Positions 56,513 through 63,000 of a stretch of DNA of 64,000 bases are shown here, piece after piece. The stretch spans positions 10,726,001 through 10,790,000 of the forward strand of contig NC_088858.1 in assembly GCF_963853765.1 (NCBI RefSeq). The letters are read 5' to 3'. Under the pieces are notes generated by a model that made no database searches, was not told the origin of the DNA, and saw only the letters and a list, made by a program, of their open reading frames with translations. The stretch's first letter is position 1. Each line of letters begins with the position of its first letter. This DNA comes from Magallana gigas (Eukaryota). The position numbers were made by a program, and so were the translations under genes.

Positions 56513-57772
56513 AACCCCTGTCACACCAAAGCTACGTCCCCACGGCGATGCCGCTGCGTCCTTAAATAATGTAAAACGCCAAGGTTAACGCAGTAGAGTC
56601 TCCTACAGCGCCGTAACAACGCAACGGCATCTTCGTTCGTCGCAGTGGGATCGCCTAGAACATTTTAGAACGCCATGCGACGGTGCGCACTTTGAACATG
56701 CACAAAGTACGCGCCGTGGCTCTGCGTTCTGATATACACGTCATAGAAACGGAGTGAGGTCGCCGTGACAGCGCCGTAAGGTCTCCAACAGCGCCACGAA
56801 AGCTCCGTTGGCACGCTCAATGAACGCAGCTAATCGCAGTGTTAAGTCAATTGCGCTTGCACGGAGACCTCTCGGAATCCTTTGGGATCTCACTGCGTCT
56901 CTATCGCGCTCTCACAGCGTATCCACAGCGTTTGAACAAGTTGTTTTTCATTTGGCTGCGTTCACACAGCGACCCCAAAGAGTTGTTGCTGCGTTCATCG
57001 CGCTCTCTTGAAGTTTCTTCTGCGTTTATTAGCGTTTGTACCGCGCTCCCACGACGTCTCTAGTGCGTTGTCATCCAGACCACGAAAACTATAACAATGG
57101 ATGTTGTACAATAGCAAGCGATGTAGTAATTATCAAACTGGACGTGGGTGACTATGTAAAAAGTAGCATTTGGTAATATTACAGGACCTATCAAAGGAAT
57201 TCATGCCATTTGGTTTTTCTGATGTTTTCACATCTTTTCTGTATTTTCTAACAACTAAATGTAATAACGGGACATTTTTGTAGACCTGGCTACAAAGAGT
57301 ATTGTTCTAGTCCTTCACAATTATTTAGAAGTAGTTACTTTTCATTACAATGTACCTATTCATCAAAACAAAACACCTTTTTATCGTTTATTTACTAGTT
57401 GTAAATTCTTGTTTGTTTCCCGTACAATTGTACAAATTAACATTAACCTACCAAGAAGTAAAGAACGTCTTGTGAACGCTGTCAGCGCGCGGCGCACGCC
57501 GTGGACGCGCGGTAAAAACTCCTAGCACGTCATGAGCGCTCGGCGAATACTCGGTGAGAGCGCAGTCAAGTAGAACTGTGGAAACGCAGTTACACGCCGT
57601 GGGAGCTCCGTAAGAACGTCCCAGTCGCAGTCAGGACGCCGTGACATCTCCACTTGTAAAATTTTCAAATAAAATTGTACATTTTTTCTGAATTTTCCTT
57701 GCGATCCTACGGCGATGCCATGAATTTTAAAACGCCGCGAACACGCCGTGGGAACTTGGTGTGACAGGGCCT
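56513..57772. mobile_element. Non-autonomous PIF/Harbinger-like element
   Basis: TIRs A(A/G)(C/G)CCCTGTCACACC..CCCACGGCG at both ends. TTA direct repeat at 56510-56512 and 57773-57775. GC-rich subterminal arms surround an AT-rich core. Confidence 0.82.
57078..57240 (+). pseudogene. Putative frameshifted C1q-domain gene fragment inside the Harbinger-like element
   Basis: Translates DHENYNNGCCTIASDVVIIKLDVGDYVK, then after an apparent 1-nt frameshift VAFGNITGPIKGIH, and in another frame GFS. This resembles the last strands of globular C1q domains (S..V.L.L..GD.V.V...G...GFSG). Confidence 0.45.
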
Positions 57773-58253
57773 TTACATTTCAATGTTTTAGCTAGAAAAT
57801 GTACCTGTTTACACAGTTTGACTTCACAAATAATACTTAGTAAGCAAATTGATTTTGTCACAGGTAATTAATCCAATTTAGTTGTCTTCTTTATTCATTT
57901 TGAAAAATAGATATATAAAATAATTTCTATTCTGGAACTGTCCATGAAAGGAGCCTGATGTTTGGAACATATATTGAACAACATATTGAGGTTCTTGAAT
58001 ACCAGTACATGAACTTGATTTTTGTATATAGCAGTTTTGTCAGAAGTACACACAGGTAAAAGTTAATTAAACATTGTGTAAACATTTTTATTAACAACTG
58101 AATATAGAGAATGATATAGGGAATGCACAGATAGTATATAAAATTGCTGATATGTGTACTGAAAATTTGATAATATACCCATATAAATTGTAAAATTGTT
58201 ATTCAGTTTTTTCATTCACACGTGAATTGACAAATAGTGTACAAAGCATGTTT

Positions 58254-59729
58254 CTAATAAACTGAGACCCCATTGGGATATTTAGGATTGTCAATTGCAC
58301 CTTGTCCAAATTTTAATTCTAAGAATTCTTGTACATGGTTTGGGGCCGACACATTTTTCCCAATGAATGCTATGGTGGACAGTGGTTTAAGGAAATGCTC
58401 AGGAAATTCAACATCCTGTTTATGACTTTTAAACCAAAAATCTTTTGTCATAATGCCATTTTTGGAATAAAATGGAAATATCTGGATATAATTTCTATTT
58501 GTTACACTGTAAAACACACGATAAAATTCTCCCTCTTCTGCTTTTTCCCATAAGAACCCCTTTTTATCAACGAACTCATAATTGCCTGTTTTCACCAATT
58601 GCTGACATTTTTGAATGTCTTCCATATAAATTCCAATGTCTACACTGATATCCCATGGAATAATGTCCCCTGAGCGAGCAGCACCAAGAAGGCTTCCTCC
58701 TTCCAGCCAATATCTCATACTGTAATTGCTAAATATATCAAATACATACTCTGCTGTTTCACGCAGAGCTTTTAAACAGCAGGGAGGGGTCCACTTTCCT
58801 CTGTGTAGAAAGTCTGGAATGTCATTGATCAAACTATAACATTGCTCAGAATCTCTGTTGCACCCGTAATAAAACTTCTTTTCATGGTCAGCATCAGTTT
58901 TATACACAACTTCTTTAATTTTGAATTTCCTGAGTAAACTGTCCTCCCTTTTCTTCTTTTCATGTTGGAATTTCTTCATGCTGCTTGGATTTTTGAACCC
59001 TTTTCTGGGTACAAACACCACAGGGGTATACACAAAAGATTTCCATCTTCTAACAACAAATTGCATATATATGGACCATGTTAATGGCACTGACCATGGA
59101 CTTGGAAGCATTGACAATGTTTCTGTGCGAATTAGAATTGCTTGATCCCCTTCTATGTAATCACAATGCCCTTCTGATCCATCAAATGTTGTAATTTTCA
59201 TTCGCCATCTTTGTAAATTGATATGCATTCCTGTGCATCTCAGATTGTCATTGCCTGTTTTCACTGCAAATGCCTGAGAAAATTTGGAATGGAAGAAGTC
59301 TTCAATAAGTCGTTCAAATACACTTTTGTTGTGTATTCTTGTTCCATCTTGTAGAAAAATAACTAAATCGGATGAGATGGCATTCAGAATTTCAGTATCT
59401 GTTGAGATTTTACCATCCATTTCAAAGTCCAAAATAAATATAGATTGAACATCACTGTTTGAGAAATTCATCCTTGGATATGTAAGTTTGTCAGCAACAA
59501 TAAATATCGGCACATCATTCCCAAGCACTGTATGAATGTGACGAACAGTCTGTGGTACATCGTGATCAAATTCTTCAAACTCTCGAATCACCACAGTATA
59601 TGTGATTTTCTTCCTAACGTTGTCTGTGATTACCTTTTCTGTTTGAAGAAAACAGTAAAGAATAATCACAAATATGATGTTACATATTAACAGACATAAA
59701 ACAACTTTTTTCTTTCTAAAACACTTCAT
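58254..59729 (-). CDS. FKRP: Fukutin-related protein-like (LicD-family nucleotidyltransferase fold), type II membrane protein, 491 aa, single coding exon
   Basis: N-terminal TM segment, TYTVVIREFEEFDHDV stem, Zn-loop GCNRDSEQC..WTPPCCLKALRETA, RYWLEGGSLLGAAR.GDIIPWD, and QDVEFPEHFLKPL..FLELKFG.GAIDNPKYPN all match the recalled human FKRP. Confidence 0.9.
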   Translation of the reverse strand: MKCFRKKKVVLCLLICNIIFVIILYCFLQTEKVITDNVRKKITYTVVIREFEEFDHDVPQTVRHIHTVLGNDVPIFIVADKLTYPRMNFSNSDVQSIFILDFEMDGKISTDTEILNAISSDLVIFLQDGTRIHNKSVFERLIEDFFHSKFSQAFAVKTGNDNLRCTGMHINLQRWRMKITTFDGSEGHCDYIEGDQAILIRTETLSMLPSPWSVPLTWSIYMQFVVRRWKSFVYTPVVFVPRKGFKNPSSMKKFQHEKKKREDSLLRKFKIKEVVYKTDADHEKKFYYGCNRDSEQCYSLINDIPDFLHRGKWTPPCCLKALRETAEYVFDIFSNYSMRYWLEGGSLLGAARSGDIIPWDISVDIGIYMEDIQKCQQLVKTGNYEFVDKKGFLWEKAEEGEFYRVFYSVTNRNYIQIFPFYSKNGIMTKDFWFKSHKQDVEFPEHFLKPLSTIAFIGKNVSAPNHVQEFLELKFGQGAIDNPKYPNGVSVY

Positions 59730-60032
59730 GCTGAAAACTAAAGAGAAAGTAACTTATTGATAATGAAAGTTGAAAATGAAAGTAGAGGTAATTTTATTCA
59801 TGTGTGTTAATTTGAGTATGCACCTAAATACATTGTATATATGTGTATAAACACGCTTTCATTTCAACTATAATTCGAAAATTAAAAGAAAACAAAAAAC
59901 TTTAGTGAATTATAAGTTCGGGATCGACAGTTCAAAAATTCTGGAATCAGATGGACGCGGGAATTCAAAATAAAAAAATAAACGACTAAACTTTAACGAG
60001 ACAGATCTGATTTTATTTACACTTGTAGCGTC
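59730..60032. promoter_or_regulatory. Probable bidirectional promoter between the FKRP-like gene and PMF1
   Basis: Divergent ATGs at 59729 (-) and 60033 (+), about 303 bp apart. Confidence 0.55.
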
Positions 60033-63000
60033 ATGAGTATGGAAAACTGTGAAGATCCAATTGAGGCCAAAGAGTCAGCAGATCAAATTTTGGGGGATGT
60101 AAATGAATCGCAGGTTGTTGATGGAAAGGTCATGCAGCAATTCAAACAGTGCCTTGACATCAGCTTGTCCAATTTTTATTCCTCTATCAGGTACAAGTTG
60201 AACTTTACTTTGCACAAAATCCTGGTATCTGAATTAATGCATTTAGTGTTCTTAAATGAAATTAGGCTAATTCTTTCATAGGTATGGAAAAACATAATAT
60301 GCACTCTTATACTTAAATTATATAAACAGTCAAACTGTTCATATTATATATCATGTATTATTGTATATGACCAGAAATTAGTCCTGACTTTTAGCTTTTT
60401 CTATTTGTAACCAATAACATTGGTAACATTGGTTACAATGCTTGATTGTAAATTATATACAAACTTATCACAGGTTGCCGCGCAGTGGTTACTGGTAACA
60501 TTGGTTACAAAGTTTAGGTTTGTGTTTAGGGTTAGAGTGAGGGTAAGGTTAGGGTCTGATTAGCCATTTAGGGTTAGTTTAGGTTAGGGATACGGTGAGC
60601 GTTAGGTTAGGGCCTGAGTAGGGTTAGGATAAGGGTTTAGGGCTAGAGTAACAATTGTAAACAATGTTACCAATGTAACCAAATAAAATAAGCCCCCCCC
60701 CCTCCCCCCAGTAAAAATGAAAGACTGTCACCTCTATTACCCTATGTCACTAAGAGCATATAGTTGTAATTATTGTAACCAAATAAACTAAGACAAAGAC
60801 TGCTAAAGAGGTCTGTTTAGTTACCCTTTGTTATCAGGAAAATATAGCTGTAACCATTGTTACTGGATGAATATAAACCATCTAACAGAAAGAAAATACA
60901 ATGTAAACAGTTATGTCATATATGTTGTCATGGTTACTTCTGTCACCAGAAAACAGTGCCTTGTAACTGGTTACAAATGAAATGGGGTAAAAGGAATTTC
61001 TGGCCATATCTCAAACTGTGAAATATGCATTTATTTCATTTTTTGGGAAATTATCCTGTTTGAATTATTTTTCCATAAATGTACCTAACTTTATCTGGAG
61101 CACAGTCATACATGTACAAATGTAATAAAAAATAATAGTGAAGGCCTCTTGTGGCTGCTTTAAACTAAAACAATGTTTTAATCAAACACATTCTAATATA
61201 ATCCCACTCTGATTACCAGTCCTCTTTTTTTCCTTCAGATTTTCATTGTTCAAGGAACATTTGCATCCTCTGAGAAAGCGACACCCACAAGATTTGAAAA
61301 AGATGCATGCACAATTCCTGGCACAGCTAAATGCTAACATTGCAGTAAGCTGATTTGATTTAACTATTAAAGACAGTGACTACATGCTGTATAAGATATA
61401 TCAACATTAAATACTCTTTGTATCTTCTTAGTTAATGTCGGCTGGAAGTAAAAGAAAAACAATAACATTTGCAGCAATATACTGTAAACGTATTATATTT
61501 TGCGTGTATGATATTTGGTGGATATTATTTTTGAACAAGTTGGCGTGGATTTCAATTGGCGTATTCCTGAATGTGACTATTCTAATACATATATGTATGA
61601 CATTTGGAGATGTACTTGATTTAGCGGTTGCCTCATTCCGCCAAAAGCGCTAAAAAGAAAACACAGCCGAATGTAGTATACGTTTACAGTATCTGATATG
61701 TATATGTAAATCTACATAACTTATTTTGAGTAAACAGACATGTATATTTAGGAGGAAATAGATTGGATGCTGAAAGAAGAGAACATTGGAAAGTTACTGA
61801 ATGGCTTGAATGATTTGATTGATGAAAACCCGCACAAAGGGAAGAAAGTTTGGTAATGTTTATTTGATTTTTTTTGTGTGTTTATGTACATGTACTAACT
61901 TTACATACAGTTATTAAAGGTTGTTCCTTTGTAAATCTTTAACATCTTTAATTTTCCCCAAATTTTATAAATAGAAAACACAGCTTTCTTAAAATGTTTT
62001 TTAATGATTATCAAAGAATTATGGTAATGAAATTTAACTTTAGGTTGATTAGATTAACCAATATTTTTACTCTTGTTCATCCTCATATAGCAGGTGACTT
62101 TGAAGCCTCTTCAACTGTTTAGTTTATTTTAAACAGATGGATATTTGAAGGGTTTTATTCTACTATTTTTCTTTCCTAGGAGACCCTCTGGCAATGCCAA
62201 ACAGGATCTATTGGCTCACACAGCCCCTTACAAACTGAAAGAGAAAGAACGTTTGCAAGGAATCCTATCTGATCTCCAATCTCAGAACAAACTTCTTAAA
62301 GACGCTGCTCGAGCGAGACAGTCCAAACTTGAACATACACAGCAGAAAATTGAACAGAAGGCACAGCAATGGAAAGAGGTTTGTCTTACTATGTGAAATA
62401 AGCTTCAATGTTTATTTTTATTTATTTCAAATTATTTGTGGTCACTTGATGTGTGTTGAGTCCTTAGACAAGACACTATATCATTAACTACATTGTCTCA
62501 GTCCACCCAGCTGGAATGGGTACCAGTTTATGCTGGGAGTTAACCTGCATTGGACTGGTGTTCCATCTGGGGAGGGTCAATGACTCATCTGCTTAGCACC
62601 ACAGAAACTTGGTTAAGCTCCAGCCCTATACTCCTCATGGCATGGAGATGGATTTAATTAATGTTTTTCTGTATCTACATTGTATGGTGTCTGTTAAATG
62701 TTTGACAGTCTCTTTTCCAAAAGATTTTCAAATCAAATGCCACATCTCATTCTAAGTTTAAAATAGAAAACAAACAGTTAAGAAAAAATACTGCATTATT
62801 TATACAGTCCCTAGGATAATGTCACAAATCTTTAAACTTGATAAGGATTTTATTGAATCAATTTAAAACTGCTAATATCTTATGTTGACAGTTGAAATAC
62901 CCGCAGTATGTACTGAAATTTAACATTGTGGTAAATAATATTCAATACAAGTGTAACAGTCTAAATCCATGCAGTTCTATGACAAAGCTTTTAAGACAGT

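What the first reader, a model, noticed from the sequence alone, without database searches (positions are those of the whole stretch)
58254..59729. FKRP-like gene has lost two catalytic aspartates: candidate pseudoenzyme or altered-chemistry glycosyltransferase
Seen in sequence: the ORF is intact (491 aa) and keeps the TM anchor, the four Zn-loop cysteines and the EGGSLLGAAR motif. However, it reads PWDISVD (Ser codon AGT at 58646-58644, residue 362) and NYIQIFPF (Gln codon CAG at 58484-58482, residue 416). Established knowledge: human FKRP has PWDYDVD and HVDLWPF, where D362, D364 and D416 are the acidic nucleotidyltransferase residues needed for metal binding and ribitol-phosphate transfer. 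The residue numbers coincide exactly, which supports the alignment. Inference: two multi-nucleotide active-site changes in an otherwise well-conserved protein suggest a catalytically dead scaffold or regulator (FKRP works as an oligomer in a multi-enzyme complex), or a new donor specificity in mollusc O-mannose glycan synthesis.
Basis: partly seen in the sequence, partly recalled or inferred. Interest (0 to 1): 0.78.

Follow-up and report, generated by a model that had tools for sequence, protein, structure and literature searches.

The report
Oyster FKRP with remodelled active site
Oysters keep a single, expressed and strongly conserved copy of the muscular-dystrophy enzyme FKRP. It has lost two of the three acidic residues the human enzyme needs for catalysis, so FKRP probably has a job that does not need its known chemistry.

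Summary
The ORF at 58254-59729 (-) is an intact, intron-less 491-aa FKRP with a stem domain and an NTase-fold catalytic domain. It matches human FKRP at E 9e-101, and the model superposes on it at TM 0.91. It reads Ser362 and Gln416 where human Asp362 and Asp416 are essential.

- **Fixed across oysters.** The same changes occur in Crassostrea/Magallana, C. virginica, Saccostrea and Ostrea, together with Y361I/T, H414Y, T431F/Y and L333F. All 34 other aligned metazoan FKRPs keep the canonical residues. The window's lineage also lost Arg295.
- **The true orthologue.** It is single-copy, sits head-to-head with the same Nnf1-domain neighbour as canonical scallop FKRP, and nests inside the pteriomorph FKRP clade.
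- **Transcribed and constrained.** RNA comes from the minus strand. Omega is about 0.11 overall and 0.076 in the catalytic domain.
- **Rest of the pathway present.** CRPPA, FKTN (triad intact), RXYLT1, two Glyco_transf_49 (B4GAT1/LARGE-type) genes and DAG1 are all found.

My best reading is a non-catalytic, ligand-binding or scaffold FKRP. An altered-chemistry enzyme is the main rival. A similar loss was seen in representatives of three holometabolous insect orders. I found no literature on this.

The parts
58254..59729 (-). Complete single-exon CDS of the oyster FKRP orthologue (491 aa plus stop)
   Evidence: Pfam gives FKRP_N at 2.8e-44 and LicD at 1e-11. PDB 6kaj (human FKRP) matches at E 8.9e-101.
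59646..59705 (-). N-terminal hydrophobic signal-anchor (residues 9-28), as expected for a type II Golgi protein
   Evidence: Seen directly in the sequence. It lies within the AF2 helix spanning residues 2-38.
58902..59600 (-). FKRP_N stem domain (residues 44-276). The equivalent of human Trp255, nearly invariant elsewhere, is K/Q/E in oysters, and the equivalent of human His252 is S/N/K.
58776..58865 (-). Zinc-finger loop (residues 289-318). All four Cys are kept (C290, C297, C317, C318), and there is a 1-aa deletion in this lineage.
   Evidence: Loop definition from PMC6965139.
58842..58844 (-). Gln296 codon (CAA) at the position of human Arg295, the acceptor RboP-phosphate ligand whose R295A mutant is inactive. 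Arg is kept in Saccostrea, Ostrea and the C. virginica representative.
58311..58769 (-). NTase-fold catalytic core (residues 321-473). This is the most conserved part of the protein within oysters.
   Evidence: Block-mean pLDDT here is 85-97, mostly above 90. Foldseek TM is 0.91 to human FKRP. 71% of core columns are invariant among four oyster genera. Omega for the catalytic domain (residues 288-491) is 0.076.
58692..58700 (-). hG[GS] nucleotide-binding motif Gly344-Gly345-Ser346, retained
58638..58652 (-). Former DxDxD metal motif, now D360-I-S362-V-D364. Asp360 and Asp364 are kept, Asp362 is replaced by Ser (AGT) and Tyr361 by Ile.
58482..58490 (-). Former HVD strand, now Y414-I-Q416. The third NTase carboxylate Asp416 is replaced by Gln (CAG) and His414 by Tyr.
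58416..58433 (-). Ribitol-interacting loop (residues 433-438). The equivalents of human His435 and Gln437 (H436, Q438) are invariant and retained.
58083..59759 (-). Extent of the RNA-library contig that covers the gene. Stranded polyA reads show transcription from the minus strand with no splice joints inside the CDS.
   Evidence: tables 2, 5 and 8.

Best explanation
This is the single, positional orthologue of FKRP (ribitol-5-phosphate transferase) in an oyster genome. On the stem lineage of oysters its two-metal NTase active site was remodelled. Asp362 became Ser, Asp416 became Gln, His414 became Tyr, Tyr361 became Ile/Thr and Thr431 became Phe/Tyr. This removes the carboxylates that hold metal site II and activate the acceptor.

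The protein kept its membrane anchor, stem domain, zinc-finger loop, the hG[GS] nucleotide motif, Asp360 and Asp364 (metal site I), and the ribitol-contacting loop. The remodelled pocket has stayed under strong purifying selection ever since.

I infer that it no longer performs the canonical transfer of the second ribitol-phosphate. It most likely persists as a non-catalytic Golgi protein that still binds a nucleotide or ribitol-phosphate ligand. It would then act as a partner, scaffold or regulator for the still-canonical enzymes FKTN and RXYLT1. Matriglycan priming in oysters might then run from a single FKTN-added ribitol-phosphate.

What is shown: identity, orthology, fixation of the changes, expression, constraint and the intact rest of the pathway. 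What is inferred: loss of activity, ligand binding and the scaffold role.
For: **Identity and fold.** Pfam finds FKRP_N plus LicD. Human FKRP matches at E 9e-101. The AF2 model has pLDDT 87.9 and Foldseek gives TM 0.91 and rmsd about 2.6 A to 6l7s/6kan/6kal.

**Catalytic residues.** Human D360A, D362A, D364A and D416A have no detectable activity. D362 coordinates Mg at site II, and D364 and D416 hold its water shell (PMC6965139). The window has S362 and Q416.

**Fixation.** The same state occurs in Saccostrea echinata, Ostrea edulis and C. virginica, and in all cluster members read (S, or N in three Ostrea-cluster members; Q always). There is synonymous variation at the new Gln and Tyr codons.

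**Concentration in the pocket.** Only six amino-acid replacements are oyster-diagnostic at columns at least 90% conserved elsewhere (plus a short oyster-specific insertion at 277-280). Four of them are positions 361, 362, 414 and 416, and a fifth (431) abuts the ribitol loop.

**Orthology.**
- There is one FKRP_N hit and one FKRP-like hit in the 564-Mb genome.
- The gene is head-to-head with an Nnf1-domain gene in oysters and in canonical scallops.
- Oysters form a clade inside the pteriomorph FKRP clade, with SH-aLRT 100 for both.

**Constraint.** NG86 omega within oysters is 0.08-0.12, and 0.17 for the closest pair. ML omega is 0.111 overall, with 0.076 for the catalytic domain against 0.127 for the stem.

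**Expression.** Stranded polyA reads and RNA-library contigs cover the gene.

**Pathway.**
- CRPPA exons are present.
- FKTN keeps the D362, D364 and D416 equivalents.
- RXYLT1, two Glyco_transf_49 genes and DAG1 are present.
- TMEM5/RXYLT1 accepts any phosphodiester-linked ribitol, shown with CDP-ribitol as acceptor (PMC4924997).

**Parallel.** Beetle, moth and fly FKRP homologues also lack these residues.
Against: No activity or binding was measured. Ser and Gln were not the substitutions tested in the human enzyme, which were Ala.

Asp360 and Asp364 remain, so metal site I could still form and support some chemistry. The strong conservation of the pocket is what an enzyme would show too.

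Downstream enzymes that in mammals need FKRP's product are retained. This would be most simply explained if oyster FKRP still worked.

The homodimer prediction gave no verdict. dS among oyster genera is saturated (1.0-2.5), so omega values are approximate.
Confidence: 0.55

Rival explanations
1. It is an altered-chemistry enzyme. The remodelled pocket (D360 and D364 kept; S362, Y414, Q416 and F431 new) still catalyses a transfer or hydrolysis. It might use a one-metal mechanism or a different donor or acceptor, for example another CDP-alditol or a different glycan.
For: The pocket region is the most conserved part of the protein within oysters: 81% of columns are invariant around the hGGS to DxSxD region and 76% around Q416 and the ribitol loop, with omega 0.076. 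The replacements are polar and roughly isosteric (Ser, Gln, Tyr) rather than random, and they are themselves conserved with synonymous codon variation. Metal site I ligands D360 and D364, the hG[GS] motif and the ribitol-loop His and Gln are retained. The acceptor-side residues changed as well (W255, and R295 in this lineage), as expected for a new acceptor.
Against: In the NTase fold the three carboxylates are the defining catalytic feature, and single Ala replacements of D362 or D416 abolish human FKRP activity. No compensating acidic residue was identified at or next to the site. NTase-fold proteins that lack these residues are typically binding modules (established knowledge: MiD51, NF45/NF90).
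Confidence: 0.27
2. It is still a normal ribitol-phosphate transferase. Ser362 and Gln416 coordinate the metals or their waters through oxygen atoms, and the tandem RboP is made as in other animals.
For: The whole downstream pathway is retained. In the substrate-free structure D416 contacts the site II metal only through water, which a Gln carbonyl could also do. Purifying selection is of the same order as in mussels.
Against: D362 directly coordinates Mg at site II, and D416 is proposed to be the catalytic base equivalent. Both Ala mutants are inactive. 34 of 34 other aligned metazoan FKRPs never vary at these positions. That would be odd if Ser and Gln were functionally equivalent. R295, which is essential in human FKRP, is also lost in this lineage.
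Confidence: 0.1
3. It is not a functional gene: a decaying pseudogene, an assembly or sequencing error, or a divergent paralogue whose canonical twin was missed.
For: None found. The genome search warns that only the best candidates are scored, so its counts are lower bounds.
Against: The ORF is intact in five oyster sequences from four genera. Omega is about 0.1. The gene is transcribed. The same residues appear in all cluster members read, from a 324-member cluster drawn from many independent runs. Synteny matches canonical scallop FKRP. Neither the Pfam FKRP_N search nor the Mytilus FKRP query finds a second locus.
Confidence: 0.02

Closest known systems
Human FKRP (ribitol-5-phosphate transferase; PDB 6KAJ-6KAN, 6L7S-U)
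   Same: It has the same two-domain architecture of FKRP_N stem plus NTase/LicD catalytic domain, with a type II anchor. It shares the four-Cys zinc-finger loop, the hG[GS] motif, Asp360, Asp364 and the ribitol-loop His and Gln. Identity is 37% and TM is 0.91.
   Different: It lacks two of the three NTase carboxylates (D362S, D416Q). It also differs at Y361, H414, T431 and L333, at the stem Trp255 equivalent, and in this lineage at Arg295.
Canonical bivalve FKRP (Mytilus edulis, Pecten maximus, Ylistrum balloti)
   Same: These are orthologues at 44-49% identity and are single-exon genes. In scallops the gene is head-to-head with the same Nnf1-domain neighbour. All fall in the same pteriomorph clade.
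   Different: They keep DYDVD and HVD. The oyster stem branch is longer (0.60 against 0.37 for the mytilid stem).
Fukutin (FKTN), the paralogous first RboP transferase
   Same: It has a LicD/NTase catalytic domain and works in the same pathway. The oyster genome encodes it.
   Different: Oyster FKTN keeps the equivalents of D362, D364 and D416. It lacks the FKRP stem domain and, according to PMC6965139, the zinc-finger loop.
FKRP homologues of holometabolous insects (Cryptolaemus, Bombyx, Eumeta, Aedes-group mosquitoes, Teleopsis, Drosophila innubila), found here
   Same: They show independent loss of the same carboxylates. The beetle has D362N, H414F and D416N, closely mirroring the oyster's S, Y and Q.
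   Different: Moth and fly forms are far more degenerate: D360 is also lost and the hG[GS] motif is altered. They fall on the insect side of the tree. Whether those insects retain the rest of the pathway was not tested here.
Known pseudoenzymes of related types: Cosmc (a glycosyltransferase-derived chaperone without a DxD motif), and MiD51 and NF45/NF90 (NTase-fold proteins without catalytic carboxylates). This comparison rests on established knowledge and was not tested here.
   Same: The enzyme fold is retained and under selection after catalytic residues were lost. They function by binding a partner or a nucleotide.
   Different: They belong to different families. No partner or ligand has been shown for the oyster protein.

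Membership tests
FKRP (ribitol-5-phosphate transferase FKRP) | N-terminal FKRP stem domain (Pfam PF22921) | tested here: met
   E 2.8e-44, residues 44-276, covering profile positions 14-244 of 245.
FKRP (ribitol-5-phosphate transferase FKRP) | C-terminal LicD/NTase-fold catalytic domain superposable on human FKRP | tested here: met
   LicD at 1e-11. The phmmer alignment covers residues 44-487 at E 9e-101. Foldseek gives TM 0.91.
FKRP (ribitol-5-phosphate transferase FKRP) | Zinc-finger loop with four cysteines | tested here: met
   C290, C297, C317 and C318 are invariant across all 39 aligned sequences.
FKRP (ribitol-5-phosphate transferase FKRP) | hG[GS] nucleotide-binding motif | tested here: met
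   G344, G345 and S346.
FKRP (ribitol-5-phosphate transferase FKRP) | Three NTase catalytic carboxylates (human Asp362, Asp364, Asp416) | tested here: not met
   Ser362, Asp364 and Gln416, so only one of the three is kept.
FKRP (ribitol-5-phosphate transferase FKRP) | Acceptor phosphate ligands (human Arg295; stem His252 and Lys256) | tested here: not met
   Gln296 stands in place of Arg295, and Ser249 in place of His252. The Lys256 equivalent is kept (K253).
FKRP (ribitol-5-phosphate transferase FKRP) | Orthology by descent (single copy, synteny, phylogenetic position) | tested here: met
FKRP (ribitol-5-phosphate transferase FKRP) | Transfer of RboP from CDP-ribitol to RboP-(phospho-)core M3 | not testable with these tools
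   This needs an enzyme assay.
Pseudoenzyme (catalytically inactive homologue kept by selection) | Loss of residues shown to be essential in an active homologue | tested here: met
   D362 and D416 (and R295) are replaced. The human Ala mutants are inactive.
Pseudoenzyme (catalytically inactive homologue kept by selection) | Purifying selection and expression after the loss | tested here: met
   Omega is 0.08-0.12 across four genera. Stranded polyA RNA reads cover the gene.
Pseudoenzyme (catalytically inactive homologue kept by selection) | Demonstrated absence of catalytic activity | not testable with these tools
   This needs an enzyme assay.

The most novel reading that the evidence does not exclude
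FKRP has an ancient function that does not need catalysis. It would act as a ribitol-phosphate- or CDP-ribitol-binding subunit that organises or licenses FKTN and RXYLT1. That function alone would be enough to keep the gene under strong selection. Oysters then build their dystroglycan-type matriglycan linker on a single FKTN-added ribitol-phosphate. At least two animal lineages, oysters and holometabolous insects, would have converted the enzyme into this pseudoenzyme independently, through the same pair of Asp losses.
Probability: 0.35. Interest if true: 0.8.

Novelty: new variant of a known kind. Interest (0 to 1): 0.66.

Why it matters
FKRP mutations cause common limb-girdle and congenital muscular dystrophies, and the protein is treated purely as the second ribitol-phosphate transferase. 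Here a natural, clade-wide variant lacks the catalytic carboxylates yet is conserved as tightly as the active enzyme, in animals that keep every other pathway gene examined. This points to one of two things: a catalysis-independent role of FKRP, or an unrecognised way of running NTase-fold chemistry.

Both possibilities are directly testable with existing assays, using mussel or scallop FKRP as matched active controls. The finding also predicts a different linker structure (one RboP instead of two) on oyster alpha-dystroglycan. It also flags that automated annotation as "ribitol 5-phosphate transferase FKRP" is probably wrong for oysters and for many insects.

Tried and rejected
- **Homodimer prediction** (residues 44-491, two copies). 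The score was 0.29 against a mark of 0.32, so there is no verdict and I do not use it as evidence either way.
- **YN00 dN/dS.** It failed (nan) for most pairs because dS is saturated. I used NG86 and the IQ-TREE GY+F3X4 model instead.
- **The careful treekit tree.** It did not finish in 300 s, so only the quick tree with SH-aLRT support is reported.
- **Pfam on single FKTN catalytic exons.** This gave no LicD hit because the pieces are too short. I used BLASTP against Mytilus FKRP instead.
- **Pfam on the 82-aa neighbour ORF.** No hit. Its identity as the first exon of the Nnf1-domain gene rests on tblastn to the Ostrea and Saccostrea loci.
- **A compensating acidic residue.** Only E385 and E398 are oyster-specific gains in the core. 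I could not measure their distance to the site because model coordinates are not exposed.
- **The neighbouring 311-aa LicD gene as an oyster-specific replacement enzyme.** Rejected as oyster-specific, because Pecten has a homologue at the same place.
- **Literature.** Searches for FKRP plus oyster, FKRP plus pseudoenzyme, and FKRP in insects found nothing relevant. The 2021 pathway-conservation survey (PMC8478517) does not mention catalytic-residue loss.
- **Species of the unnamed sequences.** The unnamed pteriomorph sequences (P0005, P0006, P0015) could not be identified, so the change cannot be dated more finely than after the split from the sampled canonical pteriomorphs (mussels, scallops, unnamed) and before the oyster crown.
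Full report
**Observation.** The minus-strand ORF at 58254-59729 is intact and encodes 491 aa. Codon 362 is AGT (Ser, 58646-58644) and codon 416 is CAG (Gln, 58484-58482). Pfam finds the FKRP stem domain (PF22921, 2.8e-44) and a LicD domain (1e-11). The only solved relative is human FKRP (6kaj and seven further entries, E 8.9e-101, aligned over residues 44-487). In that alignment DISVD lies under DYDVD and YIQ under HVD. The numbering coincides with the human protein in this region: G344, G345 and S346 are the hG[GS] motif named in the structure paper.

The structure paper (PMC6965139) gives the roles of these residues. Asp362, Asp364 and Asp416 are the three conserved NTase carboxylates. Asp362 coordinates Mg at site II, while Asp364 and Asp416 hold its water shell. 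In the CMP complex site I uses Asp362 and Asp364, and site II uses Asp362, Asp364 and Asp416. D360A, D362A, D364A and D416A all have no detectable activity.

**How widespread the change is.** A search of 5.8 billion proteins returned 594 hits. In an alignment of 39 of them (A1) only five sequences carry the change. They are the window protein, a 98% relative, Saccostrea echinata (73%), the Ostrea edulis cluster (71%) and the Crassostrea virginica cluster (73%); the names come. All 34 others have Asp at 362 and 416, Tyr at 361 and His at 414. These include mussels, scallops, unionids, clams, gastropods, octopus, annelid, brachiopod, hemichordates, amphioxus and fishes.

Among the cluster members read, position 362 is Ser, or Asn in three Ostrea-cluster members. 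Position 416 is always Gln. The codons show AGT at 362 in all five oyster DNAs. There is synonymous variation at the new residues (Gln CAG/CAA, Tyr TAT/TAC), and the outgroups have GAT or GAC.

A scan looked for columns at least 90% conserved elsewhere at which every oyster differs. It gave only six amino-acid replacements: L333F, Y361I/T, D362S, H414Y, D416Q and T431F/Y, plus a short insertion at 277-280. Four of the six are in the metal site, and the fifth abuts the ribitol-contacting loop. The change is therefore a focused remodelling of the pocket, not general drift.

In the stem domain the nearly invariant Trp (human W255), next to the phospho-mannose ligands, is K/Q/E in oysters. In the window's own lineage Arg295 is Gln, with a one-residue deletion in the zinc loop. 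Arg295 is the acceptor phosphate ligand, and R295A is inactive.

Several features are retained: the four zinc cysteines, hG[GS], Asp360, Asp364, the ribitol-loop His and Gln, and Tyr483/Pro484.

**Orthologue, not paralogue.**
- The 564-Mb genome gives one FKRP_N hit.
- With Mytilus FKRP as query it gives one strong hit, which is this gene. The only other hit is a weak one to a small LicD gene 21 kb away.
- In Saccostrea and Ostrea the gene lies head-to-head with an Nnf1-domain gene. So does the canonical FKRP of Pecten maximus and Ylistrum balloti.
- The window has the matching first exon at 60033-60188 on the plus strand.
- In a quick ML tree the oysters form a clade (SH-aLRT 100) inside a pteriomorph clade (100) with canonical mussel and scallop sequences. 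The oyster stem branch is 0.60, against 0.37 for the mytilid stem.

**The gene is functional.**
- The ORF is intact in five oyster sequences from four genera.
- NG86 dN/dS within oysters is 0.08-0.12. It is 0.17 for the 98% pair, compared with 0.12 for Mytilus against a second mytilid-like sequence and 0.065 for Pecten against Ylistrum.
- ML omega (GY+F3X4) is 0.111 for oysters and 0.052 for the four canonical sequences.
- By domain, oysters give 0.127 for the stem and 0.076 for the catalytic domain. The canonical sequences give 0.066 and 0.035.
- dS is saturated between genera, so these numbers are rough. Even so, dN is far below dS, and the "dead" domain is still the more constrained one.
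- Among four oyster genera 71% of NTase-core columns are invariant, and 76-81% around the former catalytic motifs are invariant.
- Stranded polyA RNA-seq reads cover 58206-59813 only in the orientation expected for a minus-strand RNA. RNA-library contigs span 58083-59759. No joints fall inside the CDS, and no variant is listed at either codon.
- An AF2 model has mean pLDDT 87.9, with block means of 85-97 (mostly above 90) through the core. It superposes on human FKRP with TM 0.91 and rmsd about 2.6 A.

**Pathway context in the same genome.**
- CRPPA/ISPD exons with good IspD-like sequence lie on contig 5.
- FKTN lies on contig 7 (FKTN_N hit). Its catalytic exons align to canonical FKRP so that the equivalents of Asp362, Asp364 and Asp416 are all Asp.
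- RXYLT1 is present (PF24785, 3.9e-57).
- Two Glyco_transf_49 genes of B4GAT1/LARGE type are present.
- DAG1 is present (3.3e-50).

So oysters keep donor synthesis, the first RboP transferase, the downstream enzymes and the substrate protein. Only FKRP is altered. TMEM5/RXYLT1 xylosylates CDP-ribitol, that is, any phosphodiester-linked ribitol (PMC4924997). A linker with a single RboP is therefore chemically conceivable, but this is inference.

**Parallels.** A full HMMER scan of 1.84 billion cluster representatives was aligned to an FKRP profile and realigned (A2). It showed other FKRP homologues without the carboxylates (names):
- the ladybird Cryptolaemus has PWDHNVD and FINLF (D362N, H414F, D416N);
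- an unnamed transcript, P0207, has D362N, H414Y and D416N;
- Bombyx and Eumeta are more degenerate;
- mosquitoes, Teleopsis and Drosophila innubila are more degenerate.

All named canonical insect sequences in the hit list are hemimetabolous. In the tree the degenerate forms lie on the insect side, far from oysters. The paired loss of Asp362 and Asp416, with His414 turning aromatic, therefore arose at least twice. I found no paper describing any of this.

**Interpretation.** The following are shown:
- a single-copy, syntenic, expressed and strongly constrained FKRP orthologue;
- a metal site II that has been dismantled in all sampled oysters;
- an otherwise intact pathway.

The following are inferred:
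- loss of canonical RboP transfer, from the human Ala mutants and the NTase mechanism;
- continued ligand binding in the pocket, from its conservation, the retention of hG[GS], D360, D364 and the ribitol loop, and the polar, near-isosteric replacements;
- a scaffold or regulatory role with FKTN and RXYLT1.

The main rival is that the remodelled pocket performs a different or one-metal reaction. The same conservation data fit that reading, and only biochemistry can separate the two. A still-normal enzyme is unlikely, and an artefact or pseudogene is essentially excluded.

**Comparison and novelty.** By descent and architecture this is FKRP. By the defining catalytic triad it fails the test for an active ribitol-phosphate transferase. 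It behaves like known enzyme-derived pseudoenzymes such as Cosmc among glycosyltransferases and MiD51 or NF45/NF90 among NTase folds (established knowledge, not tested here). I class it as a new variant of a known kind. It is of fairly high interest because it bears on the function of a human disease gene and can be tested with existing assays.

Noticed in passing
G000:C6:10806644-10806838 (-), locus L002 ORF 1081..2016 (-), about 21 kb beyond the window end: A 311-aa type II LicD-family protein has an intact WDDDVD motif and an FIDVF strand (Pfam LicD 5e-18). It lies on the Nnf1 side of FKRP. Pecten maximus has a homologue (35% identity over 184 aa) about 6 kb from its own FKRP, so FKRP, Nnf1 and LicD form a conserved microsynteny block. 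Its function is unknown. It is an active-looking NTase-fold transferase next to the remodelled one.
   Followed up: partly
Proteins P0190, P0207, P0208, P0223, P0220, P0225, P0234 (alignment A2): FKRP homologues of Coleoptera, Lepidoptera and Diptera lack the catalytic carboxylates. The beetle form has D362N, H414F and D416N, and the moth and fly forms are more degenerate. All named canonical insect FKRPs in the hit list are hemimetabolous. This suggests a Holometabola-wide pseudo-FKRP that NCBI annotates as 'ribitol 5-phosphate transferase FKRP'.
   Followed up: partly
L012:7589-7807 (+) (G000:C7, about 5 kb downstream of the FKTN exon at L012:2314-2457): There is a second, slightly diverged copy of the FKTN exon that encodes the third-Asp strand (…GEVKLDTFFYEEGN…). 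It lies downstream of the real exon, which points to partial duplication at the 3' end of fukutin. Earlier scan notes on this genome mention a fukutin 3'-end duplication cassette.
   Followed up: no
window 59948-60190 (+): This is the first exon of the divergently transcribed neighbour, which is an Nnf1-domain gene in the other oysters. It is expressed from the plus strand and spliced at 60190. Its start lies only about 300 bp from the FKRP start codon, so the two genes probably share a bidirectional promoter.
   Followed up: partly
window 57402-57803: RNA reads from both strands pile up here with many mismatches and loose ends. This behaviour is typical of a repeated element. It lies in the stretch that another first-stage note calls a PIF/Harbinger element, and it is separate from the FKRP transcript, which ends near 58083.
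   Followed up: no
Cluster of the window protein (P0121-P0134): Two protein haplotype groups differ at about 10 positions (Q127P, D263N, S264N, A280G, Q373P, V387I, K389E, K437R and others). Neither group touches residues 362 or 416. One member has V363A inside the motif.
   Followed up: no
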